Assembly (NCBI GenBank): GCA_002269645.1
Contig: NIVC01001103.1
Coordinates: forward strand, 124,001-188,000
Source of the DNA: Macrostomum lignano
Lineage: Eukaryota
Direction: 5' to 3'
DNA: 64,000 bases
Positions within the stretch are counted from its first letter, which is position 1. Each line of letters starts with the position of its first letter. Shown piece after piece: positions 1,136 through 64,000 of this stretch. The translations under genes were made by a program, and so were the position numbers. The notes beneath the pieces are model-generated. The model ran no database searches, was not told where the DNA came from, and saw nothing but the letters and a program-made list of their open reading frames with translations.

Positions 1136-1899
1136 TCGACAGTTACTTTCAACATCTTAGCTACGATACTTTATTCAGAGCTATACAAAGTTCTCTATAC
1201 CCCTATTTGAAACCGTTTTAGTCTATCAAAACGTTTCAGTTGTTCTGGAAGTTGTTTTTCTGTTTTCTGTTTATGACTGTCCTAATATCCTGTAATAATG
1301 ATTACGAGTATGCTATCCTCTGCTAGATAAGGATCGTGTTTTCGTATTCTCTTTGAAAAACAGCATTCCGCTTTGGAACATTTTGCTGAGTCATGACCAC
1401 TACAATTATTGTTTTTTTTACTTCAAGCGCGAGCTTCAATAGAGAAGTATTAAGTATAAGGAATAAAATAGCCGCCTTGAGTGCAAGAACTGCAAAAACA
1501 GCTGATAAAGTCGAAGCAAACTTAGCTGCTTTACCTTCCGCAACACTGCGGGCGGGCGAGCTTACTTGAACTCAACAACACGAGCTGCAATAATATTTAC
1601 GATGCATGGCTGGGCTTAACAAAGATTGTAAACCATGTCTTTTGAGATAATATTAGTCATAATGTAAACTCTCAGCTTTAATAAAATATTGCTTTTCGGG
1701 GCATGTTCTATTTTTATACTTGTCGTAAGCGCTTCTTTTTAAGGATGCACCTGAGGCCAGATAACTACAAGAGACGCAATAAAACAGATAAAAATCTCAA
1801 AAAATCACGCGCCTTTGCACACACTGGTCTATAAAAGTAATAAAATTTTTGAATTAGGGAAATCATGCAATTACAACGTGAGCAGTGCAAGCAGCAAAA

Positions 1900-4800
1900 A
1901 TGCACGACACAGAGCTTCATCAAGCTTGCGACAACGGCGACAGTGGGGCCGTAGAGCGACTGCTGAAGTCTGGCGCCGATCCGGACGCTCGGAACGCGTC
2001 GGGTCGGACGCCACTTTGGGTGGCGAGCCAGAAAGGTTTTGTGCCTGCGATGGAGCCGTTGTTGGATGCTGGAGCTCAGCTAGACTGCGCCCAGAGCGAC
2101 GGAGCGACTCCACTGTTCGCGGCTGCTCAGGGTGGCTGCGACCCGGCAGTGGCGAAGCTGCTCGAGGCAGGTGCAAGTTCGGACCTCCAACGCCAGGACG
2201 GCTCCACACCGCTGCTGATTGCTGCTCAGACGGGTCACGCCAGAGTCGTTCGCTGTCTTCTCGACGCTGGAGCCGACCCGAACCGACAAAGAAACGACGG
2301 CTCGTCGCCACTGCTCATGGCGGCTCAGTACGGTCAGCAGAGAGTGCTCGAGATGCTGCTGCAAGCTGGAGCTGATCTCCACCTGCCCAACATCTTCGGA
2401 TCGGCGGCCCTGTTCGCAGCCTGCTGGTGGAATCATTTCACAGCCATTCGTCGACTGCTGCAGGTCGGCGCGGACGTGAACCTGAAGACGAACTCCAAGT
2501 GGACACCGCTGCACAAGGCTGCTCAGAAAGGCTACCTAGAGTTAGTGAGCTTCCTCATCGAGTCAGGAGCTCTTGTAAATGCTCTGGACAACGTCAGATC
2601 ATCTCCACTGCACACAGCAGCTGAGAACGGACACGATGAGGTAGTGAAGTTTTTAATTGAGTCCAATGCGTCAATCAATGCACAGGACTCGAAGGGAGAC
2701 ACGCCGCTCCACAGGGCAGCCAAAAAGGGCAACACTGGTGTGATACGAGTTCTGTTAGAGGCCGGTGCAGATTCCAGCTTAGAGAACAAGTCCGAGGAAC
2801 TTCCGATCTGTCTGGCCGCGAGCCACTGCACACAAATGGAAGCAATCGAGCTGCTGCTTCACGCAAGCCAGCCTCATAGCGGTCACATCGAGGCGGCAAT
2901 TGCTGCCGCATGTTGCTACGGGCTCGGGAACAATGCTCTGCGACTACTCAAAAGTGTCAGAGTTGATGCAGAAGTGTTGCGGCGTATTGTCCCAAAGTCC
3001 TGCGCCAGTCTGGCGGTTCAGTGTCTGCGCCGCTTTGACAGAAGCACATCGGGAAATGTAGCATTCGGATCGACTACTCCATCCAATTGGTAAGTTAACA
3101 CCATATTAAAAATTTATGGTAAACCACATTGGTATTTACTACTTGCCAAATGATACTCTTCCACGTTAAACTCAGGCGCACTTCTTCCGAGAGCCAATTT
3201 AGCACAGAGCTGTTTGAAACTCTCGATGGCTCCGGCTTCAACAGAGTCGGTGCCCTCGGTCAGCAGGCTGAGGCAGAAATTTTGCAGCAAATCGTTCGTC
3301 ATCTGAAGCCAGACACGTGCATCAATGTAGTTGGCAGCTTCAGCGAAGGATGGGGCAGCTCGTTGAAGTGTCTTAATGGCCAGATCGACAAGGACTCCGA
3401 CATCGACTTCACGGAGATCCTCGCTGACAAACTGCACATCAAAGGTCGCTGCCAATGCGAGTCACCGGATCCTCAGAAAATAGTCGAATACAAGAAAGGT
3501 TACGTTCGCTACCCCGTTGCAAGTAAGTTAAACTCGGTCGCAATTGTGCTTTCTGATTTGTAAATAGCAGCTTGACTTTGGCCCTGCAAATCCGCTTGTA
3601 AAGAAAGATCCAAATAAATAACCGTTGTATCAAATACCGAAACTGCGTTTGTTGCAGCTGCGAATCCGAGCAACCCTCAGTTCGGCACGCCCCAGTCCCC
3701 AGCCATGGACTACGTTAACGCCTTGCGAACCTGCTGCTACCCGGACATTGAGGTCCTAAGACCAGGTCGACCGACTCAAATCCAACCGCATCTGCTCAAA
3801 GCACTCACAACCGAGCTCCAGACGTCCCTGTGTCACTTGGTCAGAGCGGCACCTCCTGACAAGGAAGGCGAATGGCTTAGATTGAGCACCACCTTCCTCG
3901 AGAGGCTCATGATTCGAGGCTTCAACACACTGCAAGGCCAGCTGTTCGTCATCCTCAAGTTCCTCATCAAGCGACATCTGTCCAAGTCAGTAAGCGTTCT
4001 CAAGACCTACGTGGCAAAGACGCTGATGTTCCGCATGATTGACGAGACTGCTGAAGACGAATGGCGTGCTGACAATCTGCTGCAGCTCACACGGCGAGCT
4101 CTGGAGATTCTGTGCGACGGTCTGCAGCATGGCGGAGAGCACGAGTGCCTGCCGCACTTCTTTGCACCTGACGCAGTCGTGTACCTGCGGAGTGATCACT
4201 CGGAAAAGAGCGACGTAATGAAAGCAATTAAAAGCACACTGGAAAACCTGAGACAGCCTCTTGTCCAACTCATGGGACAGCTGGTCACTACGAAAAACTC
4301 GAAATTCATGCAGTTTCACCCATTTACATTGGTGCCGGTTACATATGATCTGCACTCAGTCTGCACCGACATCAGCCTGCTGCACCTTTACCCCGTGGTG
4401 TGGACTCTGTTGCGAGATTTGGCAACCGATTCGAAACCCCCGATGCAGCTCATTAGCAGCATCCCTGATTGCGCGTTGTCAGTTCGAGAGAGCCTCAGAG
4501 CGATGGCCCAGCTGAAGATGGGTCAGCAAGAAGCTGCCTTGTACACACTGCGAGCGGCGGCTCAACACACGGTCAGCAAAGGAGTCGTTAAAAAGCAGCT
4601 CACTACTCTGTCGGATGTCACCGCGGATGTCTGGCAGCAGCTGGAGAACAGCGACTCGATCTGGCGATTCTGCTTCCGCTACGACCGACGTCCGGATCTC
4701 AAGTTCTTGCCCCGGTTCGTCAAAGACAACTTTCCCCTGGGCATGCAGATCTACGGAAACAGGTTCTACATGAACTTCAGCGCACTGCTGAAGTGCCTGT

Positions 4801-5125
4801 GTCTGGAGCTCATTCCGACCGACGTGAAGGACGAGTCCCGACGCTGGTTCGAGGAGACACTCGGAGATCAGGAGGCAGACGCGGCCGACCTCCTGCTGGC
4901 TCTACAGTACTGCACCGACGCGGAAACCCTGGCCGGCATTGTGCACCGGAACAGTGACGTCATCGCGAGTACACCATCTATGCAGTCGAAACTCAGCGAC
5001 AGCATGCTGCGACTGGTGAGTGATAGCATATGCATCCTTGATATAAGTAGCGTTTCTCATTCCATCTTCATGATTTTAAACCGAAATAGATGGAGAAAAT
5101 TGATTCATCCAACCACGGATTGTAG
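1900..5125 (+). CDS. Ankyrin-repeat + Mab-21/cGAS-like nucleotidyltransferase (cGLR-like), copy A. Exons 1900-3089, 3176-3522, 3658-5015, plus an uncertain terminal exon (e.g. 5090-5125)
   Basis: About 10 ANK repeats (TPLH/TPLL motifs). GT-AG introns 3090-3175, 3523-3657 and donor at 5016 join in frame: 2895 nt = 965 codons. NTase motif GSFSEG...DSDID, third Asp in MDYVNALRTCCYP, and Mab-21 C-lobe motifs HLV...WLRLSTTFLE, LKTYVAKT, W....L and LPHFF. Confidence 0.85.
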
Positions 5126-5880
5126 CCGAACCTGCACGAGAGCTGCATGCGACGGACTTTGCTGGGCTTGGCGCACCAACTGCGTCTGGAAGCAACCGCC
5201 GGAAAGTGTCGCCGTCGGCGGCGGCGCAGCGGCCGAATGCGGGAGCTGCCAGTGGCTGTGCGCACGTAGTGCAATCAGTGCGTTAAGCATGAACTGTTTG
5301 CTAAAGCTAAAAACTAAACTTACGACTTTACATGTACGCTCGTATTTCTGGCAATATTTGCTGTTCATCTTCATTTATTTATTACAAGCGAACAAGACGA
5401 TAGTAATTAGTTGAGAGTGCCGATGGGCATCACTGAGCAGTTATTCTGCAGAGCTAATAAATCCAGCTATTTAGACTCATCTGTGGGAGAAAAAGAGCAA
5501 ATTTTGAATCCCTTTTATACAAAGCAAGTCTTAGTCTCTTTATCCTGTCGTGAAAGTTGTTGGCCTTGAAATCTTTTTGAATTCTCACAGCATAGGCAAA
5601 CTTTTCACTTAGCATAAATTCTAGCAACGACTTGCTGGACTATCTCTGGAAATCGATCTGAATACAAATCTATAATTTTCTATGTGATTTTAATTCCCGC
5701 CTGATAAAAAATAATTTTTGCTAATACTGCGAGTTATAATGATTTCTCCTGTAAATATTTTCATAATTTAACATTTGCAAAGAAATAGAGTCGAACTAAA
5801 GTACAAAGATGACTACAGGTCAAGGAGTAACTATCGGCGGCAATCAGTTTACAGACATAACAGATTTATAGCTTCCAGCT

Positions 5881-6144
5881 CTACAACTTTGTATGGATTT
5901 TTAGAGTTCGTATATACTCAGACAGACGTAGCGTGAATTCCTTGAGCATATTCGACTGCCGCTCCGAGAGCAGAGCGATGATAAACTTGAAGCAGAACAG
6001 CACGGTGAGTGCATGGGTCAGCAGGAACAGATCGTACACCAGGTCTACTGACTTTATCAACTCTCTCAAAAGCCAATCGTTGCTGGTTAGCAGATAAAAT
6101 GTGAGCAGCCCAGACCGCAGGTTCAGGTGCAGCGCAGGCAGTAT
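5881..6144 (-). pseudogene. Degraded paralog of the TRP-like pore-domain ORF
   Basis: Open frame reads GLLTFYLLTS...FLLTHALTVLFCFKFIIALLSERQS versus GLLNFYLMVS...FYLVTHALIALFCFNFLVALMSERLS in ORF 234-1049. In-frame stop immediately upstream (6145-6147). Confidence 0.6.
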
Positions 6145-6310
6145 CTACGGCCGTATCGTAGAAAGCTCTGGTGGCGCAGACAGACCAGCATGAGGAAGCA
6201 GAGAACCAGGATGACTGCCCTCATAACTGACTAACTGTTGCAACGAAGATGATTTGCCAATTATTTAACCAAATAGGTTCCCTCACTTTGCTTAGTTGCA
6301 TACAACCCGG

Positions 6311-6560
6311 ATCCAGAGCAGCTCAGCGGTAACGCGTCACCACTCCCAGGTTCGATCCCTGCTCGGCCGCATTCATTTGAGACTTTTAACGAAAATTGGC
6401 CTGGGGATGTTGTGAGATTCACACCTATGAGGATCAACTGCCAAGGCACAGAAAGTGTACATGTCTGACGATTAGAAAGTTAGGACCGCTGTACACCCTG
6501 TGTGAGCGTGTGTGAGTGTACTACAGTATTGGCGCGTTTGTATGTGCTCAGGGGGTCGCC
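6311..6560 (+). mobile_element. tRNA-derived SINE, family B
   Basis: A-box-like gctcagcggtaa and B-box-like ggttcgatcc; body similar to the reverse complement of 45690-46015. Confidence 0.55.
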
Positions 6561-6599
6561 ATCAAAAACCCGAAAAATCACAACCTGAAAGCACTTCCC

Positions 6600-6815
6600 A
6601 TCATAAACCCGAAATATCACAAACCCGAAATATCACAAATCCGAAATATCATAAACCCGAAATATCACAAACCCGAAATATCATAAACCCGAAATATCAC
6701 AAACCCGAAATATCATAAACCCGAAATATCACAAACCCGAAATATCACAAACCCGAAATATCACAAACCCGAAATATCATAAACCCGAAATATCACAAAC
6801 CCGAAATATCATAAA
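6600..6815. repeat. 16-bp tandem repeat (aaacccgaaatatcaY)
   Basis: About 13 near-identical units. Confidence 0.9.
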
Positions 6816-7000
6816 CCATATGGATTTCTATGGACTTTCAAAGCAAGAAAATTCTATGTTTTTGATTTGCTGTTTCTCTGCTCCGTATGCATTGCTTTCT
6901 GTATTATAGCTCCTTGATGGTAAGCATTTTTTGTTAGTGCAGGCAGATACTACTTATTAAATTTCCGAATAAACAATTAGAATAAATATTATATTAGATC

Positions 7001-7539
7001 CAGGGGCGTAGGGAGGGGGATAGGGGGGATGTATCCCCCCCGAAGAGCCTGGCCAAAACTTTTTTGTTGTCCTTTGTTGCTATACATGCTACCATGTGAC
7101 TCTGTCATAGCACTTTTTCCTTGGTGTATCCCCCCCGTAGGAAATTCACCTTGGTGTATCCCCCCGTAGGAAATTCACCTTGGTGTATCCCCCCCGTAGG
7201 AAATTCACCTTGGTGTATCCCCCCGTAGGAAATTCACCTTGGTGTATCCCCCGTAGGAAATTCACCTTGGTGTATCCCCCGTAGGAAATTCACCTTGGTG
7301 TATCCCCCCGTAGGAAATTCACCTTGGTGTATCCCCCCGTAGGAAATTCACCTTGGTGTATCCCCCCGTAGGAAATTCACCTTGGTGTATCCTCCCGTAG
7401 GAAATTCACCTTGGTGTATCCCCCCGTAGGAAATTCACCTTGGTGTATCCCCCCCGTAGGAAATTCACCTTGGTGTATCCCCCCGTAGGAAATTCACCTT
7501 GGTGTATCCCCCCGTAGGAAATTCATGGCTACGCCCCTG
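7001..7539. mobile_element. hAT-type MITE with internal ~29-bp tandem array
   Basis: Perfect 11-bp TIRs CAGGGGCGTAG (7001-7011) / CTACGCCCCTG (7529-7539). Perfect 8-bp TSD attagatc at 6993-7000 and 7540-7547. About 14 internal units cttggtgtatc(c)ngtaggaaattcac. Confidence 0.85.
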
Positions 7540-7642
7540 ATTAGATCCATAGAATTGTATGGATGAACATAAATTTCAACACAATTTTCTTAAGTCATTG
7601 TTAAGTCATTGTTAGCCTATTTTAGAGACACTGTTTCCAAGG

Positions 7643-9619
7643 TTACCATTGCATCTTCCAGTCAGGTGTGGTTTTATAGTCCGGGCGTGGAGGCCGTGTC
7701 TCTCGCTCAGGCTCAGGTGTGGTCTCATAGTCCGGGCGTGGAGGCCGTGTCTCTCGATCAGGCTCAGGTGTGGTCTCATAGTCCGGGCGTGGAGGCCGTG
7801 TTTCTTGCTCAGGCTCAGGTGTGGTCTCATATTCCGGGCGTGGAGGCCGTGTTTCTTGCTCAGGCTCAGGTGTGGTCTCATAGTCCGGGCGTGGAGGCCG
7901 TGTTTCTTGCTCAGGCTCAGGTGTGGTCTCATAGTCCGGGCGTGGAGGCCGTGTTTCTTGCTCAGGCTCAGGTGTGGTCTCATAGTCCGGGCGTGGAGGC
8001 CGTGTTTCTTGCTCAGGCTCAGGTGTGGTCTCATATTCCGGGCGTGGAGGCCGTGTTTCTTGCTCAGGCTCAGGTGTGGTCTCATAGTCCGGGCGTGGAG
8101 GCCGTGTTTCTTGCTCAGGCTCAGGTGTGGTCTCATATTCCGGGCGTGGAAGCCGTGTTTCTTGCTCAGGCTCAGGTGTGGTCTCATATTCCGGGCGTGG
8201 AGGCCGTGTTTCTTGCTCAGGCTCAGGTGTGGTCTCATAGTCCGGGCGTGGAGGCCGTGTTTCTTGCTCAGGCTCAGGTGTGGTCTCATAGTCCGGGCGT
8301 GGAGGCCGTGTTTCTTGCTCAGGCTCAGGTGTGGTCTCATATTCCGGGCGTGGAGGCCGTGTTTCTTGCTCAGGCTCAGGTGAGGCTCCACCAAAATCAT
8401 AAAGGTGGGGAGGCAATGGTGGCAAATTTTTTGTCACGGATTGTACTTCTGGAAAATAACTGGCAACGATTTTTGTGTAACGAAACAGCTGGCTCATGTG
8501 ATACCAAATCCGTCTGAGCACTTCTATTTGCCAATAATCGAGCTGAAGGACACGTTTCGTGTTAGGCTTTTCTTCTTTTGGCTCACTGGTGCCGTATTGC
8601 CTGGTCCTGCCGTTTGTAGTGTAATCCTCCTGCGGTGTAGGGAACCATGGAGAGCGCGTAGTCTTGCCGTATTGCCTGGTCCTGTAGTTTTCAGTGTACT
8701 CCTCCCGCGGTGTAGGGAACCATGGAGAGCGCGTAGTCTTGCCGTATTGCCTGGTCCTGTAGTTTTCAGTGTACTCCTCCCGCGGTGTAGGGAACCATGG
8801 AGAGCGCGTAGTCTTGCCGTATTGCCTGGTCCTGTAGTTTTCAGTGTACTCCTCCCGCGGTGTAGGGAACCATGGAGAGCGCGTAGTCTTGCCGTATTGC
8901 CTGGTCCTGTAGTTTTCAGTGTACTCCTCCCGCGGTGTAGGGAACCATGGAGAGCGCGTAGTCTTGCCGTATTGCCTGGTCCTGTAGTTTTCAGTGTACT
9001 CCTCCTGCGGTGTAGGGAACCATGGAGAGCGCGTAGTCTTGCCGTATTGCCTGGTCCTGCCGTTTGCAGTGTCATCCTCCCGCGGTGTAGGGAACCATGG
9101 AGAGCGCGTAGTCTTGCCGTATTGCCTGGTCCTGTAGTTTGCAGTGTAATCCTCCCGCGGTGTAGGGAACCATGGAGAGCGCGTAGTCTTGCCGTATTGC
9201 CTGGTCCTGCCGTTTGTAGTGTCATCCTCCCGCGTTGTAGGGAACCATGGAGAGCGCGTAGTCTTGCCGTATTGCCTGGTCCTGCCGTTTGTAGTGTCAT
9301 CCTCCCGCGTTGTAGGGAACCATGGAGAGCGCGTAGTCTTGCCGTATTGCCTGGTCCTGTAGTTTGCAGTGTAATCCTCCCGCGGTGTAGGGAACCATGG
9401 AGAGCGCGTAGTCTTGCCGTATTGCCTGGTCCTGTAGTTTTCAGTGTACTCCTCCCGCGGTGTAGGGAACCATGGAGAGCGCGTAGCAGCGTCGTAATGG
9501 CTTGTCCTGTAGTTTCTATTGTAATCCTTCCATGGCCGTTGGAATCTAAACGTGGGAAGGGCAACGACCGCGCTCAATCCGAGAGCAAGGAGCAAAAGCA
9601 CGATCTTTAAGTCAGCCAT
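7643..9619 (-). CDS. Secreted Thr/Pro/Arg/Glu/Tyr-rich protein with two tandem-repeat domains
   Basis: ATG at 9619 with signal peptide MADLKIVLLLLALGLSAVVALP. 12 x 25-aa repeats (TTRSPWFPTPREEYTENYRTRQYGK), a unique linker, then 14 x 17-aa repeats (PEPEQETRPPRPEYETT). One stop-free frame spans both arrays and the linker. Confidence 0.8.
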   Translation of the reverse strand: MADLKIVLLLLALGLSAVVALPTFRFQRPWKDYNRNYRTSHYDAATRSPWFPTPREEYTENYRTRQYGKTTRSPWFPTPREDYTANYRTRQYGKTTRSPWFPTTREDDTTNGRTRQYGKTTRSPWFPTTREDDTTNGRTRQYGKTTRSPWFPTPREDYTANYRTRQYGKTTRSPWFPTPREDDTANGRTRQYGKTTRSPWFPTPQEEYTENYRTRQYGKTTRSPWFPTPREEYTENYRTRQYGKTTRSPWFPTPREEYTENYRTRQYGKTTRSPWFPTPREEYTENYRTRQYGKTTRSPWFPTPREEYTENYRTRQYGKTTRSPWFPTPQEDYTTNGRTRQYGTSEPKEEKPNTKRVLQLDYWQIEVLRRIWYHMSQLFRYTKIVASYFPEVQSVTKNLPPLPPHLYDFGGASPEPEQETRPPRPEYETTPEPEQETRPPRPDYETTPEPEQETRPPRPDYETTPEPEQETRPPRPEYETTPEPEQETRLPRPEYETTPEPEQETRPPRPDYETTPEPEQETRPPRPEYETTPEPEQETRPPRPDYETTPEPEQETRPPRPDYETTPEPEQETRPPRPDYETTPEPEQETRPPRPEYETTPEPEQETRPPRPDYETTPEPDRETRPPRPDYETTPEPERETRPPRPDYKTTPDWKMQW

Positions 9620-10710
9620 GCTTGTCAATTCGCTGATACGAATTTCTCAGTAAGGACTTCAAAGTGGACCTGTATTGTGTTATATAGTCTGCAAATGCGC
9701 ATAAACGGACGACATTTTCACTCCATTTGAGAAAAATACTTACCTCGAAAAAATTCAAAGGCTGCTGTGCAGACAATCATAAACAGATAATTGCGTCTCA
9801 GGTATAAAAAGATATTTCGATTTTTGCGATTTTGCAGACAGAGAGAAAATATTCTTTGAAATGCGAAATTAGACGCCGCCTTTTCGCTAAATTTGCCGAA
9901 GCGAAAAAATAAAAGAATAGCCAGGAAATTATTCGATTTATTTTCAATTTTAGCTTCAAATTCTTATGCTGTCTTGGATTAATATCTTCACTAAGCCAGC
10001 TTACATTTCAGTTACTAATTAAGCTACTAAACTTGACACAACGACCTGTATATTGATGAATCAAACAATGAGTTAACTTAATTAAACCAAAATAGCTAAA
10101 TCCAAGATGACTTGTTGTTGACGTGACATTTACAAAGTATATGTATCGAACCACCATCAAATAGTTGCCAAGTCGGATTTTAAACGTCGCAAAATGACCT
10201 TTAATGTTCGCTCAACGCAGCGGTGCTTCAGATCGGCCTGCAAAATTACGAGTGCAGACATCAATTCGTTTTCCTTCCAAAATTAAAAATGACGAATAGG
10301 ACTCAAAAGAACCACAAAACGAAAAAGCTAAGGAACTCGCATCGTTTCTCGTAATGTTTTGAAAGCTAATCTGTTTTAACAAAATAAACGGTGAAAGTCT
10401 TTGATTCAAGGCCTGCTACTAAATGGTTGAGCATACTAATACATGTGTCATGTCTTCGTATGCTCCGTTTATTATGTTTATCGTCCTACTGAATCATAAT
10501 CGATAACTACAATCGTACATTAAGATGTTAGAGACTGGTGTTTAAGATATTAAAATCTAATTAGAATCGCGACATGCATAATTTTGTCAGGAAATACGCA
10601 ATTCACCGGCCTCAAATCAAACCCTGTCACTGAAATTCACTGTCGGGAAATTCTAGTTATGAAAATGATCCTTAACAAAATGAAGGCACACAAATTATTG
10701 CTTTACTTAC

Positions 10711-13700
10711 GTTTCTTGCAAAACCGGCTTCCAAATTTGATTGAAGACTTGGTAAAATGTCGATAACGTCACTGTTCCGGTGCACAATGCCGGCCAGGGT
10801 GTCCGCGTCGGTGCAGTACTGCAGAGCCAGTAGGAGGTCGGCCGCGTCTGCCTCCTGATCTCCGAGTGTCTCCTCGAACCAGCGTCGGGACTCGTCCTTC
10901 ACGTCGGTCGGAATGAGCTCCAGACACAGGCACTTCAGCAGTGCGCTGAAGTTCATGTAGAACCTGCTTCCGTAGATGAGTTCGTCTTTGACGAACCGGG
11001 GCAAGAACTTGAGACCCGGACGTCGGTCGTAGCGGAAGCAGAATCGCCAGATCGAGTCGCTGTTCTCCAGCTGCTGCCAGACATCCGCGGTGACATCCGA
11101 CAGAGTAGTGAGCTGCTTCTTGACGACTCCCTTGCTGACCGTGTGTTGAGCCGCCGCTCGCAGTGTGTACAAGGCAGCTTCTTGCTGACCCATCTTCAGA
11201 TGGGCCATCGCTCTGAGGCTCTCTCGAACTGACAACGCGCAATCAGGGATGCTGCTAATGAGCTGCATGTCAACATGTGGTTCTTCTGCTAGTTGCAGAA
11301 TTGTCATCCAGACAAGTAGGTAGATGTCCAAGATTTGGGGACGCGTCGCATCGATTGAACATATACCCATTCTGATTGAATGTTCATCGTATAAAACAGG
11401 AATTAGTGTCATTGGATGAAATTCAAATATTTCCTGACTTTCTTGTTGGCACAGTTGCTCTATAAATTGAAGCAGAAGCTGTCTCAGGTTTTCCAGTGTG
11501 CTTTTAATTGCTTTCATTACTTCGCTCTTTTCCGAGTGACCACTCCGCAGGTACACGGCTGCGTCAGGTGCAAAGAAGTGCGGCAGGCACTCGTGCTCTC
11601 CGCCATGCTGCAGACCGTCGCACAGAATCTCCAGAGCTCGCCGTGTGAGCTGCAGCAGATTGTCAGCACGCCATTCGTCTTCAGCAGTCTCGTCAATCAT
11701 GCGGAACATCAGCGTCTTTGCCACGTAGGTCTTGAGACCGCTTACTGACTTGGACAGATGTCGTTTGATGAGGAACTTGAGGATGACGAACAGCTGGCCT
11801 TGCAGTGTGTTGAAGCCTCGAATCATGAGCCTCTCGAGGAAGGTGGTGCTCAATCTGAGCCATTCGCCTTCCTTGTCAGGAGGTGCCGCTCTGACCAAGT
11901 GACACAGGGACGTCTGGAGCTCGGTTGTGAGTGCTTTGAGCAGATGCGGTTGGATTTGAGTCGGTCGACCTGGTCTTAGGACCTCAATGTCCGGGTAGCA
12001 GCAGGTTCTCAAAGCCCAAACGCAGTCCATGGCTGGGGACTGCATGCAGTGTAGCTGCTAGAGGATGACTTGGATTTGCAGCTAAAAGCATAAAGGTGTA
12101 TGAAATAGGCTAAAAGTGCGAAAATGACGTTGGATAAAAAACCTTAATATACGAGCTCGTACATACTTCCAACTGGATACTGAACATATCCTTTCTCGTA
12201 CGCTGCCATTCTGTTTAGGTCCGGCGCCACGCACTTGCAGTATTGTTGTAGGTGCAATTCAACCACTAAAATTACCGTGAAATCTATGTCGGAGTCGCTG
12301 TCAATACGACCATCCAGAGCTTTAAGAGAGCTGCCCCAGCCTTCACTGAAGCTCCCTACCGCATTGACACTGCCCATCCCACTTTTCCTCGCTATTTGCT
12401 GCAAAATGTCTGCCGCAGCCTGCTGCACAGCGGCACCTTCCTGGGTGAACCCAGAGTCTCTGAGGCAGCAGAATAACATCTGTGACAGGTCCTCTTCGTG
12501 ACTGAGGGTGTCGTGTCTGTAAGGCAGTGAAAACGTTTTCAGTCAGGACTGTTAAGTTTCTAAACACAACTCTCATACTACTTTTACTAAGCAGTATTTT
12601 ACCTTTTTAGTTTCTTTTTCTGCAAAACTGTTTGTTGCTTTACAAGATCTATGCAGTCCTCAAGTAGTGCGACACACTGGCTCGGCATGTCTAGCAGATT
12701 GCTCTTGTTCAGGCTGCTATGATTTCCGCGCATAATAATAAGCGCCGTCTCCCAATGACCCAATTGGCAGGCCTTAACCAGACAAGCTTCTGGGCTTTGA
12801 ATGGAAGAGCCAAGGTCTTGCACTTTTAGCAGCGAAGTTGCCGTTTCCCAGTGCGGATCTGCAGCCAAAGCCAGGGGCGTGTCTCCAGCATTGTTCACAA
12901 GAGAAGCTGAGGCTCCCGCATCGAGCAGCGTCTTGATAACATCTGTATGACCTTTCATAGCCGCTCTATGGAGAGGAGAATTTCCGGCCGCATCCTGGGC
13001 GTTCACTGAAGCATTAGACTGAATAAGAAGCCTCACCACTTCTGCTCGTCCATTCTCTGCTGCAGAGTGCAGCGGGGACGATTTAACATTGTCAAGAGCG
13101 TCGATTTCGGCCCCATTTTCGATTAGAAATATTGAAAGCTCAATGTGACCTCTCTGAGCGGCTTTGTGCAACAGAGTCCACTTTGTTTTAGTCTTCTGAT
13201 TAACATCCGCTCCAGCGTCGAGCAGCCACCGCATGACTGTCACATCGCCCCAACCGACTGAGGCGAACGCTGGTCCAACTAGAAATTGATTTGTCAGCGT
13301 AACATCTGCGCCAGCGCCCAGCAGTAGCTTCAATATTTGGTTTTGACCGCACTGGGCCGCGATGATTAGCGGAGTTGAGCCGTCGATTCTGCGTAAATTG
13401 ACATCAGCCCCGGCGTCAAGGAGTTGGCGGACAATACGGATATTTCCAGCCCGTGTAGCGATCAGCAGCGGCGTTGATCCGTCCAAACGCTGGGCATTCG
13501 GACTCGCGCAGGCCAACAGCAGCGTCGCAACGGCGGCGTCACAGCTGCCTTGGGCAGCCTCTAACAGCGGAGTTGCACCGTCGATCTGCGAGCAGTCAAC
13601 CTGGGCTCCAGCGTTCAGTAGCGGCGCCATCGCTGCAACCACATCTTTTTGGCTTACCACGCAAAGCGGCGTCCGACCCGACGAGTCGCGAGTGTCCGGA

Positions 13701-13780
13701 TTGGCGCCAGATTTCAGTAGCAACTTCACAGCCTCAATGTCTTCGGTGAGACAAGCGCGATGCAACTCAGACCCTGGCAT
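10711..13780 (-). CDS. Ankyrin-repeat + Mab-21/cGAS-like nucleotidyltransferase, copy B. Exons 13780-12603, 12516-12167, 12081-10711; apparent 4-bp frameshift at the start of exon 3
   Basis: Same domain order, intron positions and phases as copy A (intron 1 is 86 nt in both). GSFSEG...DSDID motif intact. TGCA duplication at about 12041-12048 breaks the frame relative to copy A. Terminal exon not identified. Confidence 0.8.
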
Positions 13781-14371: not shown

Positions 14372-15655
14372 ACAATGTAATATTCCTGCACGAAAACGAG
14401 TGCGTCAATGGCAAAAGCACGAGTGCGCGAAGCGCACGAGTGCATTTTGCCATAGACGCACGAGTTTGCGTGTAGGAAAATCATTGTCTTTTGACCATAG
14501 ACAAAGTCATTCCTGCACGGTTTTCGAGAAACGTTAAGAAGAGATGAAAATTGAGTGGAGAGTTTATAGAAAAGTGTATAAAGCTTATTGACTATGGCGT
14601 CTGTAATCGACTCGGCTCTGAATCCTCCATTAATTGATTTTCGCTACGCTACGGTGTCTGGATTAAGTGGCGACGAAATGTTTATTGAAAGTGTGTCCAG
14701 CAACTTTGAGAGGACGGGCGACGATTTGACTGCACTGATAGCGGATTGCACGTTCAGCGAGGAATTAGAGAAACTTTTCAGCTCGGATCCGGAAACCTTG
14801 TGTAACCTTGACGAATTGGAAAGTCTGGCCGCTCAACTGGAACGCGACAACGAATGTCATTCGACTGTCTCTAAGGAGAAAGCTGTGATCAACCGCTTGA
14901 CGGCCTGGTTGGCGGAGAATAATTTAAAAGTGGATTACGCGACTGCTTCGGTGGAAGAAATTGCCAAATGGGTCCGCTACTTCTATGCGACTCTGCGTAA
15001 GTCAGACGGCAGCTTCTATTCGCCGAATACAATCGTAGGATATCGAGCCGCACTGATCAGGTACTTTATGAGAGGCAAGAAGAGGGACTCGATCATGGCA
15101 GGGATGAGTGATCAGCTGACAGTCGCTCTAGCTGGAACTATGCCGGCACCAAGTTCTACATTGAGCGAAGCTCCTGCAAGGGCTGTTACAACTACCGACC
15201 CGTGCGCCCTGAACGACGCTCCTACAAGGGCTGTTGCGACTACCGACCCGTGCGGATCAGCGTCAATGTCAACTGTCAAGAAGTCACTGGTTGTTGAAGA
15301 ATCGACCACCACACTTGTAGCAGCCCCCACTAAGCGGATGAAGATTTTGGCAAACGGCAAAACGAATGTTGTGCAGTTTATTTTCGAGTAAATGCCGAGA
15401 GGGGTGTGAGTAGGTCTATAGACTCATTAACTGTTTCCCTAGTTCCACTTATTATCCTTTTTGTTCTTCCATATTGTTATTGATTACATATTCAGTTGCT
15501 TCTAAAAATAAATTGTTAAATCGTGCAGGAATGAAGTCATTCCTGCACGATAAGCTAACGTATGTCAAGTGATTTCTACCATAGACACAGACATTCCTGC
15601 ACGATAATAAATCGAAAAAATCATTCCTGCACGCTGTGGTCAAACGACAATGTAA
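14372..15655 (+). mobile_element. Non-autonomous Crypton-like (DUF3504 / tyrosine-recombinase class) element 1; ORF 14594-15391 internally deleted
   Basis: ORF contains YFYATLRKSDGSFYSPNTIVGYRAALIRYF, the typical N-terminal motif of DUF3504/ZMYM/Crypton proteins, but no catalytic core. Bounded by 9-bp direct repeats ACAATGTAA, with hairpins near both ends. Confidence 0.65.
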
Positions 15656-16638
15656 CGATATATACCGATTTTTTTCGGCAGCAATTGCGTAAGCTGAAGC
15701 CGCGTAGGAATGCGCTTTGAAAGGGTTGTAGAGATAATCAATCGTCTATGGCAAATTTAGTTGCTCTCTAAATGAAAGGGTTGTAGAGATAATCAATCGT
15801 CTATGGCAAATTTAGTTGCTCTCTAAATGAAAGGGTTGTAGAGATAATTAATCGTTTATGGCAAATTTAAAGGACAGTGAAGACAGCTAGCCTGGCTGCC
15901 ATGAGTTAATTCTCAAGTTGATTTTGAGCTTGAATTAATTCTCCTATTCGGAGTGCAAATAGGAAAACTAGCTATGATTCGCTACGCAAACATTCCTGGC
16001 GGAGAAATATGTGGACTCTCCACGGACGAGTTGGCTTTTGTCACCCGAGAGTCGAGCACGCGCTACGTTCTGGAGATGGACAACCTGGATGCGTCGTCCA
16101 GTTCCAACGGGCTGCCTGAGCTAGGTAGCGAAGATCTGGAAATGTTGGACCGACTTGAGAGTGACTCAGTGCCGAAATCGACCGAGACGCAACGGAAGCT
16201 TCACGTGGCAAGGTTCCGACAGTTCCTCAACGAGAAGGGGCTTTGCCAGGAGTTTGAGCGTGTTCCGGATCGATTTTTGAACGATTATCTGAGGCTTTTC
16301 TGAGGTTTGTTCTTAAGAACTTTTTGTGACTATGAAACACTTTCGCCGTGTTGCTATTGTTGTTCCTTGTTTTGATAGCCAAATACATTCGTCTGAAATC
16401 CGGCAACAATCGAAAAAAGCCGACAAACAATTAAATTGTTACCGCAAGTATGAATGCCGGAAACCATAGACAAAAGGGAACAATGCAAAGAATCAGCGGT
16501 CGCAGCACGTGACAACCGATTTGTCTATGGCAATCGTTGTCACGCACTGGGACCGCTGATTATTTATCCATTGTTTAGTAATGTATTGTTTTGCATAAAC
16601 TGTGCGAACAACGATAGTCAAATTGCTAAACAATGTTA
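15647..16638 (+). mobile_element. Crypton-like element 2 (N-terminal fragment ORF 15953/15974-16303)
   Basis: VPKSTETQRKLHVARFRQFLNEKG...EFE...LNDYLRLF resembles the Crypton/DUF3504 N-terminus. Shares accatagaca and gtctatggcaaa motifs with element 1. Long hairpin at about 16478-16575; 55-bp tandem repeat at 15718-15870. Confidence 0.5.
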
Positions 16639-20151: not shown

Positions 20152-23052
20152 CAATAATGCAATGTAGAAAAATGTGTTTAGAAACAATTAGTACTATTTT
20201 ATTAGCACATCAAACTGACCTGCTCAAGCATGGAGTCGCCAACACCGTCGCGGTACAGGATGATGCGGGCGGGCAACTCGCCGTTTTTCTCCCTGAACTT
20301 CTGCAGGGCCATAGTGAAGCCAGCATCCAGCCTGTTGTGAAGCTCAGCTTTGCCTCCCTTCACGATTGGCGAGTACGAGTAGTACTGGGTGAAGGTTTCA
20401 TTTAGTGAGAACACCACACCCTGCACGGAGCGACTTTGCCGCTTGTCGTGGTAGCTGTCCATCCCTATGATCATTGTGCGCTTTATCGGGATGCTGAGAG
20501 CCCAAGCAACACCGCCCAGCTTGCAGGAGATCTGTATAGCCACCTTCGTAGCAACGGACATTACTTTGGCCGGGTTGCGGATAGTCTTGGTAAGTACGCA
20601 CTGGCTCGGCACCGGCTTATCCACGTAGCACAGGCGTTTGATGATGTTATATCGATGGGCATTGTTGTTAGGCAGCAGACAGAACACAAGGTCCAGCTCC
20701 TGATTGATGTTATCTTGGATAGTCTTTAGCCAGAACTGGTCTCGGTCCTGCATCACGGGCAGCACGTAGGGCTCGCCAAATGACATTCCGAGAGACTGAG
20801 AAACCCGATGGAGCTTCTGGCAGAAGTCGGCGGCCGCCTGCTCGTCTCGCTGAAAATAGACGAATATCCAATTCTTGCAGTCGATTGGCTGGAACATGCC
20901 GTTGCCCTTAAGGCCATTGTCCCAGTCAGCGCGCTCAGGGTCCACCCTGATTGGCCGCGACATCTGCACAGTCTCCGGCTGCAGCTGGCGGGCGGTGGCC
21001 TCCACAGCGTTAGGCGATACTTCCAGACCGAACTCTCCCAGCACCCGACGGCTCTCGGGATTGCCAGCCATTGTGCGGGCAAAGGTGAGCATCTTGTCGC
21101 ACCGAGCTGACGGATTGACCCTAGTATGGGTGGCCAGATCCCTCATCAGGTTGCGGTCAGCTCGCATGTCATCAGTGAGGCCGGTCATGTAACAGACCTC
21201 CGGCGGCAGTAGCACGTTATCCGCCTGCTCCCGGCGGCCTCCCTTAGTTGGCGGCAGATCTCGCTTGCGCGGTTTGGACACCAGAAGCGGCTGCTTATCA
21301 TCTGCCAGATCGATGTCGTAAGTCTGCTTAAAGTACTGCCCGAAAGTAATCTGTTCCTCCTGCCGGGTGGTCTTGTTAAACCAGCGGAAATGCTCGTTTA
21401 CGCCCTTGTCCCACTCGATGCTGTCAATCCGATAGGTCTTATTATTGTGCCGAGTCAGCACTATTTGGCCGACCAACGCGCTTTCAGCTGCGGCGTGAAA
21501 CTGATTGCTAGCGACTCGATTATACATGTCATACATAAAGTCTAACACGGTGTTGGTGTGAATAAACTTGTTCGACGGATCCAGGTAAAGCATCAGCGGC
21601 CCGTCAGTGGGTTTCACTGCCATCTCGAATCCCGGCCAAACCTGGGGAACAGATTGGCGATGCTTATTATAGTTTTTGTTGTATATTTGTTGTAAGGGGG
21701 CTGCAGCCTAGTGGTTAGAGCGTTGGACTCACGACTTGCAGGTCGGGGGTTCGAATCTCTGACTCACTCGGAACAATTTGTGTCCTTGAGCAAGACAATT
21801 AACTCTTCAGTTTAACCAGCTGTGAAATGGGCACAGCATTAGCTGGGATATTTGAGGCTGTGTGGCGACCCTCCCCCCCCCTCAGTCCTTGGACTGAACA
21901 GCCGTACGCAGCCTTCAGATGCGCCGCGCAATAGCTGCGGCTGAGCTGTCGGTTGCACAACTGTATATTAGAGCAGCTGCAATCAATTATTATTGGGTAT
22001 TTCTACCAAAACGAGACACTGTCTCGTTTTCTCGTTTTCCAAATTGTATGTTGGACACTCAAGGGTTTCGCAGTATACTTTTAACTCGTGCGATCCTAGT
22101 TTGGCTTGCACAATAATAAACTTAAGTCAGAGTATTAAGATGATTTAAATACAAAAATGAATTTTTATGAAAAATACGTGTTTTCTTTCGTTTGAAACCA
22201 AATTTGGTTTTAAAATCAATTTAAACTAGAGAAACTTTGATAAAATTGTCATCTTACCTCCATACCGTAGTTAGGAAGCCTGGTGGCCTGGTCCGGATAA
22301 TAAAAGTTTCGACCAACCATCTGCATATTGAGGTACCGCTGAGCCTTGCCAAGCACAACATTCATCAGGTGCAGCCATTGCGGCGTGTTCCTATTAACTT
22401 CGCCCACCTGCCGGATGGCCACTTCGCCAGTCCAAGACTTGATGCTGGCCTCGAACTTCACTCCCTCAGGCGGATTCAGTGGCTGCCTCGTGTACAGAAT
22501 GCCGCCATCGTAGACGAACGGCTTTGGCACCTGACTGGCGTCAGTCAGCAGCTTCTCGCGAAGCGGTTTGGCACCCAGCATCGGGCGAAAATCCACAGCC
22601 ATCTGGTAGGTGCGCCAGTTGTCTTTAACGTTGAGAGCAACGTAATTGGTCACAACCTGAACAGGGGCGCCACTGGTGCCTCTCTTGTTGCTGACCGGAA
22701 CGCCCTCAGGTCGAACATTCGCTAGCTGGTAGCGCAGTAGCTTCCGCTGCAGGCCGCCCCGTTCGCCGCCAACCTGCAGGCCGGCCATGCGCTCTGCCAG
22801 CTGTTCTGAGTCTCCGCCAGTGGCACCTGCACCCTGGCGATACCCGAAGCCAGAAGCTCCGGGCGGCCCCGCTAAACCAGGAGGCGGAGCTGGAGACGAA
22901 GCAGCAGCAGCAGGCGATGTTGAAGCTGCGGCTGCTGAGCCGGAGTCAAAAGATGCAGCAGAGGCAGCACTGGCGGAAGCCTCAGCTGGCCGTGGTCCGG
23001 CGCGACCGCGAGAACGACCTCGGCCTTTGGTAGCATGCTGCTGCTGAGACAT
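19587..23052 (-). CDS. piwi: Piwi-clade Argonaute, 898 aa. Exons 23052-22258, 21641-20220, 20066-19587
   Basis: N-terminal GRGRSRGR motifs, VWPGF, PAZ domain (TYRIDSIEW), MID/PIWI motifs PSQC, [38 protein letters not shown], C-terminal LFFL. Phase-0 GT-AG introns join in frame (2697 nt). Confidence 0.95.
20103..20147. repeat. (CT)n(CA)n microsatellite in piwi intron 2
   Basis: Direct observation. Confidence 0.9.
21696..21995 (+). mobile_element. tRNA-derived CORE-like SINE, family A (in piwi intron 1)
   Basis: A box gcctagtggtta, B box ggttcgaatc, CORE-like gtgtccttgagcaagacaattaact, (TTA)n tail; similar copies at 47956 and 59525. Confidence 0.8.
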
Positions 23053-30021: not shown

Positions 30022-30604
30022 NNNNNNNNNNNNNNNNNNNNNNNNNNNNNNNNNNNNNNNNNNNNNNNNNNNNNNNNNNNNNNNNNNNNNNNNNNNNNNN
30101 NNNNNNNNNNNNNNNNNNNNNNNNNNNNNNNNNNNNNNNNNNNNNNNNNNNNNNNNNNNNNNNNNNNNNNNNNNNNNNNNNNNNNNNNNNNNNNNNNNNN
30201 NNNNNNNNNNNNNNNNNNNNNNNNNNNNNNNNNNNNNNNNNNNNNNNNNNNNNNNNNNNNNNNNNNNNNNNNNNNNNNNNNNNNNNNNNNNNNNNNNNNN
30301 NNNNNNNNNNNNNNNNNNNNNNNNNNNNNNNNNNNNNNNNNNNNNNNNNNNNNNNNNNNNNNNNNNNNNNNNNNNNNNNNNNNNNNNNNNNNNNNNNNNN
30401 NNNNNNNNNNNNNNNNNNNNNNNNNNNNNNNNNNNNNNNNNNNNNNNNNNNNNNNNNNNNNNNNNNNNNNNNNNNNNNNNNNNNNNNNNNNNNNNNNNNN
30501 NNNNNNNNNNNNNNNNNNNNNNNNNNNNNNNNNNNNNNNNNNNNNNNNNNNNNNNNNNNNNNNNNNNNNNNNNNNNNNNNNNNNNNNNNNNNNNNNNNNN
30601 NNNN
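30022..30604. other. Assembly gap (583 N) flanked by a 1.4-kb direct duplication (28611-30021 vs 30605-32015)
   Basis: The copy after the gap begins exactly with the sequence at 28611, and the copy before the gap ends exactly with the sequence at 32015. Differences are mostly single-base homopolymer indels. Confidence 0.9.

Positions 30605-54160: not shown

Positions 54161-64000
<9,840 letters not shown>

What the first reader, a model, noticed from the sequence alone, without database searches (positions are those of the whole stretch)
3727..12008. Patchwork gene conversion between the two cGLR paralogs, leaving a hypervariable island
Seen: the ANK arrays, exon 2 and introns differ strongly between copies. 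In exon 3, block 1 (3727-4256 vs 12008-11479, 530 nt each) differs by only a handful of substitutions. It is followed by an abruptly divergent patch (4257-4442, 62 codons, vs 11478-11269, 70 codons). Near-identity then resumes (4443-4965 vs 11268-10761, one 15-nt indel). Inference: recent ectopic conversion between the inverted copies homogenises the catalytic C-lobe while one segment, and the ANK sensor, are kept divergent. This pattern is typical of immune receptors under diversifying selection.
Basis: partly seen in the sequence, partly recalled or inferred. Interest (0 to 1): 0.75.

Follow-up and report, generated by a model that had tools for sequence, protein, structure and literature searches.

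The report
Gene conversion between two flatworm cGLR paralogs
Two old, inverted copies of an ankyrin-repeat cGAS-like immune-receptor gene in the flatworm Macrostomum lignano have had two ~0.5-kb stretches of their last exon overwritten by copy-to-copy gene conversion. This is a real but ordinary process, and nothing shows that selection protects the stretch left between them.

Summary
Gene A (+, exons 1900-3089, 3176-3522, 3658-5015) and gene B (-, exons 13780-12603, 12516-12167, 12081-10711) are convergent ANK + Mab21/cGAS-like genes of Macrostomum lignano. The window is part of GCA_002269645.1 contig NIVC01001103.1.

Two intra-exonic tracts are near-identical:
- 3693-4261 / 12042-11474: 97.7% identity, dS 0.03.
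- 4443-4965 / 11268-10761: about 98% outside one 15-nt indel island, dS 0.07.

Everything else is saturated. ANK and exon 2 have dS about 1.9, and the introns, flanks and patch are no more alike than shuffled sequence.

Interlocus gene conversion is the only good explanation. Codon composition points to an A-type donor and B as acceptor. Tract divergence is about twice the coding divergence between the species' subgenome copies, so the event is probably not ongoing.

The selective reading is not supported:
- The patch is not hypervariable across the family.
- dN/dS is never above 1.
- The ANK arrays evolve under purifying selection (about 0.16).
- A/B differences are not enriched at ANK binding positions.

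B also carries a +1 frame break exactly at the 5' tract edge when spliced like A, so it may be a pseudogene. This is a new instance of a well-known process in a gene family already described as cGLRs.

The parts
1900..3089 (+). Gene A exon 1: nine ankyrin repeats plus linker. The ATG is at 1900; the ORF is open from 1885.
   Evidence: ORF list; Pfam Ank E 3e-67; GT donor at 3090.
3176..3522 (+). Gene A exon 2: NTase N-lobe with the GS motif (VGSFSEGWG) and the DxD motif (DSDIDF).
   Evidence: The spliced translation is open and 100% identical to UniRef proteins P0001 and P0002 over this exon. The motif columns are invariant or nearly invariant in the family.
3658..5015 (+). Gene A exon 3: third catalytic Asp strand, Mab21 C-lobe, patch and helical C-terminal extension.
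   Evidence: Pfam Mab-21_C 26.8 bits against a cut-off of 24.1. AlphaFold model. Foldseek hits to MAB21L1, cGAS and MB21D2 at probability 1.0 over about 190 columns.
12603..13780 (-). Gene B exon 1: ankyrin repeats plus linker.
   Evidence: Intact 393-aa ORF; Pfam Ank E 1e-58. Against A: 63.5% nucleotide identity, dS 1.9, dN 0.31.
12167..12516 (-). Gene B exon 2: NTase N-lobe with GS and DxD motifs intact.
   Evidence: Against A: 60% nucleotide identity, dS 1.9, dN 0.41.
10711..12081 (-). Gene B exon 3, bounded by splice sites homologous to those of A. The internal ORF 12045-10672 is open for 457 aa.
3693..4261 (+). Conversion tract 1, A copy (Asp strand plus Mab21 C-lobe).
   Evidence: 97.7% identity over 569 nt with no gaps. 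Over 3693-4256: dS 0.03, 4 synonymous and 8 nonsynonymous differences.
11474..12042 (-). Conversion tract 1, B copy.
   Evidence: Its GC3 of 0.64 matches A's composition, not that of B's native exon-3 pieces.
4257..4442 (+). Unconverted patch, A version (62 codons). It comprises the end of a helix, the FHPF motif, a low-confidence loop and a second helix.
   Evidence: Residues 200-261 of the model. Helix 198-208, pLDDT below 50 for 209-237, helix 240-255. Family alignment of the patch.
11269..11478 (-). Unconverted patch, B version (70 codons, AT-rich third positions).
   Evidence: 35% amino-acid identity to A with an 8-codon indel. GC3 is 0.33 against 0.63 in A. Nucleotide similarity equals shuffled sequence.
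4443..4965 (+). Conversion tract 2, A copy (family-specific helical C-terminal extension).
   Evidence: dS 0.067. Divergence equals that of tract 1 (13/569 vs 10/503, p = 0.83).
10761..11268 (-). Conversion tract 2, B copy.
4728..4748 (+). Small divergent island inside tract 2. A reads NFPLGMQ and keeps the family's FP motif. B (10978-10985) reads EL and is 5 codons shorter.
   Evidence: family consensus.
12043..12081 (-). Native head of B exon 3 with the +1 frame break. It is 39 nt where A has 35, and the extra base abuts the 5' edge of tract 1.
   Evidence: Spliced at the homologous sites, B's frame is off by one (frame starts at 12079 against the ORF's 12078). It then hits a stop after ...LLLPGH. 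An in-frame alternative uses donor 12166 and the AG at 12034-12033 and deletes 16 residues.
7643..9619 (-). Spacer gene between the two copies: a signal-peptide protein made of 25-aa and 17-aa tandem repeats. It is not part of the conversion but would be flipped by any inversion between the tracts.
   Evidence: ORF; tandem repeats. Annotated with an identical 658-aa product in GCA_002269645.1.

Best explanation
A and B are old sister paralogs of the Macrostomum lignano ANK-cGLR family, arranged tail-to-tail. Non-reciprocal homologous repair (interlocus gene conversion) copied A-type sequence into exon 3 of B. This was either one event with a discontinuous tract or two events of the same age. 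It overwrote about 569 nt (the Asp strand plus the Mab21 C-lobe) and about 524 nt (the C-terminal helical extension).

The 186/210-nt patch, a 21-nt island, the first 35-39 nt and the last about 50 nt of the exon are simply native sequence that the repair did not replace. The patch carries a 24-nt length difference and has no residual nucleotide similarity, which makes heteroduplex formation across it unlikely. No selection is needed to explain its survival.

The event is young on the scale of the paralogs (dS 0.03-0.07 against about 1.9). It is probably as old as, or older than, the species' genome triplication.

B shows a frame break at the tract edge, a 5-codon loss of a conserved motif, and a raised dN/dS since conversion. 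B may therefore be decaying, or it may be spliced differently from A.

Shown: the mosaic, its significance, its boundaries, the synonymous homogenisation, the composition asymmetry and the fold. Inferred: the donor direction, whether there was one event or two, the dating, and the neutrality of the patch.

The confidence given is for conversion as the origin of the mosaic. The donor direction alone I put at about 0.7.
For: - Two sharp tracts at 97.7% and about 98% identity, with nothing comparable elsewhere in the two genes.
- dS is 0.03 and 0.067 in the tracts, against about 1.9 or saturated elsewhere.
- The longest perfect run is 179 nt, against at most 48 in 10,000 permutations.
- Introns, flanks and patch are at shuffle-level similarity, so the tracts are imports into an old, diverged locus and not the reverse.
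- GC3 of B's native exon-3 pieces is 27/98, against 250/358 in the tracts (p = 7e-14). A's native pieces are 58/89, not different from the tracts (p = 0.44). This points to an A-type donor.
- The two tracts are equally diverged (p = 0.83).
- The tracts are not 100% identical. At one site B keeps the family-invariant Gly where A and the A-type proteins P0001 and P0002 have Val. This argues against mis-polishing.
- A-type proteins from another assembly share B's state at 2-3 of the differing sites.
- The subgenome coding divergence of 1.1% gives the time scale (PMC10733133).
- The patch is not hypervariable in the family.
- ANK dN/dS is about 0.16, and differences are not enriched at binding positions.
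Against: - No third DNA sequence was obtainable (homeologous copy, ortholog or native B tract). Per-segment phylogenetic incongruence and the direction of conversion are therefore not formally tested.
- The assembly could not be checked against reads. The only other copy of this locus that the tools could fetch (L002) is the same assembly record as the window.
- Before conversion the two copies were probably only about 60-75% identical. That is low for classical homologous repair, so a replicative template-switch mechanism is possible.
- A-B identity in the patch (35% amino acid) is lower than in ANK (61%) or exon 2 (54%). Some acceleration in the patch is not excluded.
- B's exons 1 and 2 have GC3 0.53-0.56, higher than its native exon-3 pieces. 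The composition argument therefore rests on only 98 codons.
Confidence: 0.8

Rival explanations
1. One reading: conversion repeatedly homogenises the enzyme core, while diversifying selection actively preserves a hypervariable ligand- or partner-specific island (the patch) and the ANK sensor. This would resemble immune receptor families.
For: - The patch has the lowest A-B amino-acid identity of the structured parts (35%, against 54-61% in exon 2 and ANK).
- It contains a low-confidence, indel-prone loop.
- The family is a lineage-specific expansion of putative immune sensors (PMC9980059).
- dN/dS in the tracts since conversion is raised (0.45, against 0.16-0.21).
Against: - The patch is not more variable than the converted blocks across 16 other paralogs.
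- It contains the conserved FHPF motif.
- pN/pS in the patch is 0.59 with pS saturated.
- The ANK arrays are under purifying selection, and differences are not concentrated at binding positions (p = 0.21).
- Other unconverted pieces (exon head, tail, linker) are even more diverged, so the patch is not special.
- One partner is frame-broken.
Confidence: 0.12
2. Replicative template switching between the inverted copies (fork stalling or microhomology-mediated break-induced replication) rather than double-strand-break repair conversion. This would give a patchy tract with small junction errors.
For: - The copies are inverted and only about 6-7 kb apart.
- The likely pre-event identity was low.
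- The tract is discontinuous, with a complex 21-to-6-nt island.
- There is an extra base at the 5' junction in B.
- A second family locus carries an inverted partial duplicate.
Against: - The outcome cannot be told apart from discontinuous conversion with two sequences.
- The junctions show no templated insertions that I could recognise.
- The extra base lies in the native head of the exon, not demonstrably at the junction itself.
Confidence: 0.1
3. Assembly or polishing artefact in a triplicated genome. Reads of A were used to correct B, or a chimeric contig was built.
For: - Mlig_3_7 represents a neopolyploid with three copies about 2% apart, and is described as error-prone in copy representation (PMC10733133).
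- Neither A nor B is annotated in the NCBI record.
- No B-type protein was found in the databases searched.
- The window contains a 583-nt N gap at 30022-30604.
Against: - The tracts differ at 23 substitutions, including a site where B keeps the family-ancestral residue. Mis-polishing would give identity.
- Native A and B are too diverged (shuffle-level) for reads to cross-map.
- The tracts sit in inverted orientation between unique B sequence on both sides and within 1.3 kb, which is shorter than the long reads used.
- A's arrangement, running into the spacer's tandem repeat, is echoed by the gene model P0002 from another assembly.
Confidence: 0.05
4. Reverse polarity: B is a recent copy of A, and its ANK, exon 2, introns, patch, ends and flanks were later replaced by sequence from a third, distant paralog.
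For: A large family of paralogs exists that could serve as donors.
Against: - It requires many independent imports covering everything except two intra-exonic blocks, including introns and both flanks.
- In ANK and exon 2, A and B are more similar to each other (54-61% amino-acid identity) than A's exon 2-3 region is to any other family member retrieved (46% or less).
- No other paralog is closer to B's patch than A is.
Confidence: 0.02

Closest known systems
Interlocus (ectopic) gene conversion in clustered multigene families, for example MHC, KIR, globins and plant NLR clusters (from general knowledge, not tested here).
   Same: Short tracts (about 0.5 kb) of near-identity, including synonymous sites, lie inside otherwise diverged, physically close paralogs. 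The mosaic structure has sharp edges.
   Different: The partners here are inverted and convergent, and were very diverged before the event. Only one exon is affected. One partner may be non-functional. There is no evidence that the process generates useful diversity.
Arm-to-arm conversion in large palindromes, for example primate Y-chromosome ampliconic palindromes (general knowledge).
   Same: Inverted copies a few kb apart exchange sequence within one chromatid. The identical inverted blocks could also mediate inversion of the spacer.
   Different: Palindrome arms are near-identical along their whole length, non-coding DNA included. Here introns, flanks and most of the genes are at random-level similarity.
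Metazoan cGAS-like receptors (cGLRs) as catalogued by Li et al. 2023 (PMC9980059), including ANK-fused cGLRs and five M. lignano family members cloned for their screen.
   Same: - Same fold. The family model best matches cGAS at E 1e-7, and A's exon 3 matches MAB21L1, cGAS and MB21D2.
- The GS, DxD and D motifs are present.
- An N-terminal ANK module is present, as in a minority of described cGLRs.
- The sequence motifs match those of the screened M. lignano proteins.
   Different: A and B themselves are not annotated in NCBI. Their activity, ligand and product are unknown. The roughly 250-residue helical C-terminal extension that contains the patch was not matched to any solved cGLR structure here.
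Templated conversion from pseudogene donors, for example chicken immunoglobulin V diversification (general knowledge).
   Same: Patchwise copying between a functional gene and a possibly non-functional neighbour in inverted orientation.
   Different: Here the possibly broken copy is the acceptor, not the donor. The event is germline and evolutionary rather than somatic and programmed.

Membership tests
cGLR / Mab21 nucleotidyltransferase family | cGAS-like bilobal NTase fold | tested here: met
   The family member P0003 was modelled at pTM 0.86. Its best PDB matches are cGAS (E 1.2e-7, about 360 columns), then MAB21L1, MB21D2 and bacterial CD-NTases. A's exon-3 product matches the C-lobe of MAB21L1, cGAS and MB21D2 at probability 1.0.
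cGLR / Mab21 nucleotidyltransferase family | Sequence-profile match to Mab21 / cGAS | tested here: met
   Pfam Mab-21_C scores 26.8 (A) and 27.0 (B) bits against a cut-off of 24.1. The family core profile matches cGAS at E 2.7e-8, cGAS-like receptor 1 at 2.9e-6 and MAB21L1 at 2.7e-3.
cGLR / Mab21 nucleotidyltransferase family | Active-site motifs h[G][GS] ... [DE]h[DE] ... [DE], which separate cGLRs from inactive Mab21L1-type proteins | tested here: met
   A has VGS(52-54), D75-I-D77 and D133 in the numbering of the core. B has the same residues: VGSFSEGWG, DSDIDF and AMDCV. The equivalence to cGAS catalytic residues is inferred from motif and strand position, not from a residue-level structural alignment.
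cGLR / Mab21 nucleotidyltransferase family | Ligand-activated synthesis of a nucleotide second messenger and signalling through STING | not testable with these tools
   Five other M. lignano paralogs were cloned for the screen of PMC9980059. No result for them is given in the main text. The presence of STING in this genome was not examined.
Interlocus gene conversion | Sharply bounded tracts of near-identity within otherwise diverged paralogs, beyond chance | tested here: met
   The permutation test is (179 nt against at most 48).
Interlocus gene conversion | Homogenisation of synonymous sites, which excludes protein-level constraint | tested here: met
   dS is 0.03 and 0.067 in the tracts, against about 1.9 in ANK and exon 2.
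Interlocus gene conversion | Phylogenetic incongruence between tract and non-tract segments when third sequences are included (GENECONV/RDP-type test) | not testable with these tools
   Only protein-level A-type relatives (P0001, P0002) were retrievable. The homeologous and orthologous loci could not be fetched.
Immune receptor region under diversifying selection | dN/dS above 1 in the variable segment | tested here: inconclusive
   In the patch pN is 0.445 and pS is 0.755 (saturated), a ratio of 0.59. Two sequences only, so there is no positive evidence.
Immune receptor region under diversifying selection | The segment is hypervariable across the family | tested here: not met
   Entropy is 1.39 bits in the patch, against 1.25 and 1.54 in the blocks. 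Pairwise identity is 38.7%, against 47.7% and 38.3%.
Immune receptor region under diversifying selection | Variation concentrated on the ligand-binding surface of the repeat sensor | tested here: not met
   A/B differences fall at 24/53 canonical ANK binding positions, against 87/242 other positions (p = 0.21). ANK dN/dS is about 0.16.
Palindrome with arm-to-arm conversion | Arms near-identical over their whole length, including non-coding sequence | tested here: not met
   Introns, 5' and 3' flanks are at shuffle-level similarity. blastn finds only the two exon-3 tracts plus weak coding matches.

The most novel reading that the evidence does not exclude
The two near-identical inverted blocks flank a divergent module. 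They could act as recombination handles. An inversion with a crossover in tract 1 would flip the 6-7 kb spacer, with its secreted-repeat-protein gene. It would also swap patch-plus-C-terminus between the two different ANK/N-lobe halves, giving a polymorphic or recurrent cassette exchange that re-pairs sensor and C-terminal modules in a cGLR pair. Nothing here shows that such inversions occur.
Probability: 0.04. Interest if true: 0.6.

Novelty: new member of a known kind. Interest (0 to 1): 0.3.

Why it matters
It documents at base-pair resolution that paralogs of the lineage-specific ANK-cGLR expansion of a regenerating flatworm model exchange sequence.

This matters practically. Segment-wise histories will mislead any phylogeny, dating or selection scan of this family that treats genes as units. 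A and B are also unannotated in the reference record.

It does not reveal a new mechanism. The attractive immune 'hypervariable island' reading is not borne out.

The inverted identical blocks are a plausible substrate for a local inversion, which would be worth a look in long-read data.

Tried and rejected
- Independent evidence for B. An exact-product look-up of B's exon-3 ORF found nothing.
- A protein search with B's exons 1-2 was swamped by generic ankyrin proteins and was uninformative.
- A search with the neighbouring Piwi ORF, meant to reach homeologous contigs, returned no M. lignano protein.
- The look-up of the spacer gene returned the same assembly record as the window.
- The cluster look-up gave no further members.
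I modelled A's exon-3 product and a full family member instead.
- The first PDB profile search was swamped by ANK hits. I repeated it with a trimmed core.
- Purifying selection or codon constraint as the cause of identity was rejected because synonymous sites are identical.
- Retroposition or exon shuffling was rejected because both tract edges lie inside the exon.
- A whole-arm palindrome was rejected.
- I looked for the same pattern in other family pairs. P0008 against P0005, P0006 and P0017 shows a softer protein-level mosaic. The P0005 locus holds an inverted 2.7-kb partial duplicate that includes 3' flank. That is a segmental duplication, not an intra-exonic patchwork.

Full report
**What is there**

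The window is eukaryotic. Protein searches identify it as Macrostomum lignano. The first 19,619 bases are identical to GCA_002269645.1 contig NIVC01001103.1, the Mlig_3_7 assembly.

Two genes with the same three-exon structure lie tail-to-tail:
- A on the + strand: exons 1900-3089, 3176-3522 and 3658-5015.
- B on the - strand: exons 13780-12603, 12516-12167 and 12081-10711.

Each encodes nine ankyrin repeats (Pfam Ank E 1e-58 to 3e-67), a linker, and then a Mab21/cGAS-type nucleotidyltransferase. No further copy is present in the 64 kb. Between the two genes lie tandem repeats and a gene for a signal-peptide, repeat-built protein (7643-9619, - strand).

**Checking the observation**

- 3693-4261 against 12042-11474 is 97.7% identical over 569 nt without gaps.
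- 4443-4965 against 11268-10761 has 10 mismatches plus a 15-nt indel.

The best-matching stretches elsewhere in the genes reach only 75-77%.

I built a protein-guided codon alignment. For analysis only, one base of B was skipped to keep the frame. It gives the following:

| Segment | nt identity | dS | dN |
|---|---|---|---|
| ANK repeats | 63.5% | 1.9 | 0.31 |
| Exon 2 | 60% | 1.9 | 0.41 |
| Tract 1 | 97.9% | 0.03 | 0.019 |
| Patch | 48% | pS saturated | 0.67 |
| Tract 2 | 96.9% | 0.067 | 0.022 |

Both introns, both flanks and the patch are no more alike than shuffled sequence. The longest perfect run is 179 nt, whereas 10,000 permutations of the differences never exceeded 48.

Two refinements apply. 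Near-identity begins at 3693/12042, not 3727. The '15-nt indel' is a small divergent island (4728-4748), where B has lost five codons of a motif conserved in the family.

**What the genes are**

The closest database proteins are two A-type UniRef models from another M. lignano assembly (P0001, P0002). About sixteen paralogs share 25-46% identity, most of them also ANK-fused.

Structure and profile evidence:
- A full family member modelled at pTM 0.86 best matches cGAS (E 1e-7), then MAB21L1, MB21D2 and bacterial CD-NTases.
- A's exon-3 product (pLDDT 74) matches the C-lobe of MAB21L1, cGAS and MB21D2 over its first roughly 190-200 residues. The remaining roughly 250 residues form a helical extension with no significant structural match.
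- A trimmed family profile hits cGAS (2.7e-8) and a cGAS-like receptor 1 structure (2.9e-6) by sequence.
- The GS, DxD and third-Asp motifs are invariant or nearly so in the family, and are present in both A and B.

Li et al. 2023 (PMC9980059) already treat this M. lignano family as cGLRs. Five paralogs are in their cloning table. They also note ANK-fused cGLRs as a minority architecture, and that most flatworms lack cGLRs. Calling A and B ANK-cGLRs is therefore justified by fold, motifs and precedent. Their activity is untested.

**Where the tracts fall**

- Tract 1 runs from just before the third catalytic Asp through the whole Mab21 C-lobe.
- The patch corresponds to residues 200-261 of the exon-3 product. 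It comprises the end of a helix, the conserved FHPF motif, a roughly 30-residue low-confidence loop that carries the 8-codon length difference, and a second helix.
- Tract 2 is the family-specific helical extension.

Both outer tract edges lie inside exon 3. They sit 35-39 nt after the acceptor and about 50 nt before the donor. Intron-mediated exchange is therefore excluded.

**Mechanism**

Identity at synonymous sites rules out protein constraint. Divergent introns and flanks rule out a recent whole-gene duplication. The remaining explanation is non-reciprocal copying between the paralogs.

Direction. B's native exon-3 pieces (head, patch, tail) have GC3 of 27/98. The tracts have 250/358 (p = 7e-14). 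A's native pieces have 58/89, which does not differ from the tracts (p = 0.44). The tracts therefore look like A-type sequence placed into B. This is an inference from 98 codons, and I put it at about 70%.

One event or two. The tracts are equally diverged (13/569 against 10/503, p = 0.83). One event with a discontinuous tract, or two events of similar age, fit equally well. The small island inside tract 2 favours patchy repair. The patch has no residual nucleotide similarity and carries a 24-nt length difference, so failure of heteroduplex formation or repair across it is a sufficient neutral reason for its survival. Because the copies were so diverged beforehand, a replicative template-switch between the inverted copies is a live mechanistic variant.

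**Age**

M. lignano carries three subgenome copies that differ by 1.1% in coding sequence and 2.2% genome-wide (PMC10733133). The tracts differ by 2.0-2.3%. That makes the event roughly as old as, or older than, the triplication.

Three protein-level observations fit this dating:
- The A-type proteins P0001 and P0002 share B's state at two to three of the eleven amino-acid differences.
- P0001 and P0002 share A's Val at a site where B keeps the family-invariant Gly.
- These differences, and the fact that the tracts are not identical, also argue against mis-polishing.

**Status of B**

Spliced at the sites homologous to A's, B's exon 3 is read one base out of frame. Its native head is 39 nt where A's is 35, and the extra base abuts the 5' tract edge at 12043-12045. 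Translation stops soon after.

An in-frame alternative exists. It uses the same donor with the AG at 12034-12033, inside the tract. It would delete 16 residues just before the catalytic Asp.

B's three exons are otherwise open, and its long-term dN/dS against A is 0.16-0.21. If B is dead, it died recently. Since conversion, dN/dS in the tracts is 0.45, higher than the long-term value (p = 0.01-0.05). At least three of the replacements, however, are on the A side. No B-type protein is in the databases, and neither gene is annotated in the NCBI record. B's functionality is unresolved.

**The selective interpretation**

The claim that the patch is a hypervariable island kept divergent, together with the ANK sensor, does not survive testing.
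- Across the other paralogs the patch is as conserved as tract 2 and only slightly less than tract 1.
- The ANK arrays are under purifying selection.
- A/B differences are not enriched at the canonical binding positions of the repeats (p = 0.21).
- The patch's A-B identity (35%) is lower than that of ANK or exon 2. The linker and the exon tail are lower still.
- With two sequences and saturated synonymous sites, positive selection can be neither shown nor excluded. There is no positive evidence for it.

**Comparison and novelty**

This is a textbook-type interlocus conversion mosaic. The gene family was already catalogued, and the partners are unannotated. It is not a palindrome, and nothing suggests a programmed diversification system. 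I rate it a new member of a known kind, with modest interest.

The most novel reading not excluded is that the inverted identical blocks mediate inversion of the spacer. That would swap C-terminal modules between the two sensors. It is testable in long reads.

Noticed in passing
window 12043-12081 (B exon 3 head): A +1 frame break in copy B lies exactly at the 5' edge of the first conversion tract. An alternative acceptor inside the tract (AG at 12034-12033) would restore the frame but deletes 16 residues.
   Followed up: partly
window 7643-9619 (-): An intronless gene lies between the two cGLR copies. It encodes a signal-peptide protein built of about 12.5 copies of a 25-aa repeat and about 14 copies of a 17-aa repeat. 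It has no Pfam match. It is annotated with an identical 658-aa product in GCA_002269645.1.
   Followed up: partly
window 1885-5015 and 10711-13780: Neither cGLR copy is annotated in the NCBI record of this contig. Only the repeat protein and a Piwi gene are called in the 22 kb fetched.
   Followed up: yes
window 20202-23052 (-): A Piwi/Argonaute gene (PAZ E 1e-32, Piwi E 7e-34; a 900-aa product in the NCBI record) lies 6.4 kb from B. The nearest database protein to its large exon is only 74% identical, and no M. lignano protein was returned.
   Followed up: partly
L001:264-2732 (-) versus L001:13427-16115 (+): At the locus of another family member (P0005, contig NIVC01001474.1) there is an unannotated inverted partial duplicate. 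It is about 2.7 kb long and covers the 3' part of exon 3 plus the 3' flank with a tandem repeat. Identity is 92-96%. The tblastn hits to the copy are split across frames.
   Followed up: partly
proteins P0008 versus P0005/P0006/P0017: A softer protein-level mosaic appears in another paralog pair. Identity is 93-97% across the start of the C-lobe but 20-60% in the ANK, N-lobe and C-terminal parts. This hints that partial homogenisation recurs in the family. No DNA was available for P0008.
   Followed up: partly
window 30022-30604: A run of 583 N (scaffold gap) sits inside a 24-38 kb stretch of very low GC (23-37%).
   Followed up: no
window 40178-63746: The right third of the window is dominated by tandem arrays. 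A 22-mer occurs about 80 times (51603-53380), with GC skew +0.54. There are also (TCTG)n at 57576-58665, (TGTC)n at 55305-55644, (ATAG)n at 62871-63746 and (AACT)n at 60709-61117, plus several 24-52-mer arrays.
   Followed up: no
window 14588-15391 and 15953-16303 (+): Two ORFs (267 and 116 aa) just beyond B's 5' end have loosely similar N-terminal acidic regions and no Pfam match. No identical product is on record for the first; the second was not looked up.
   Followed up: partly
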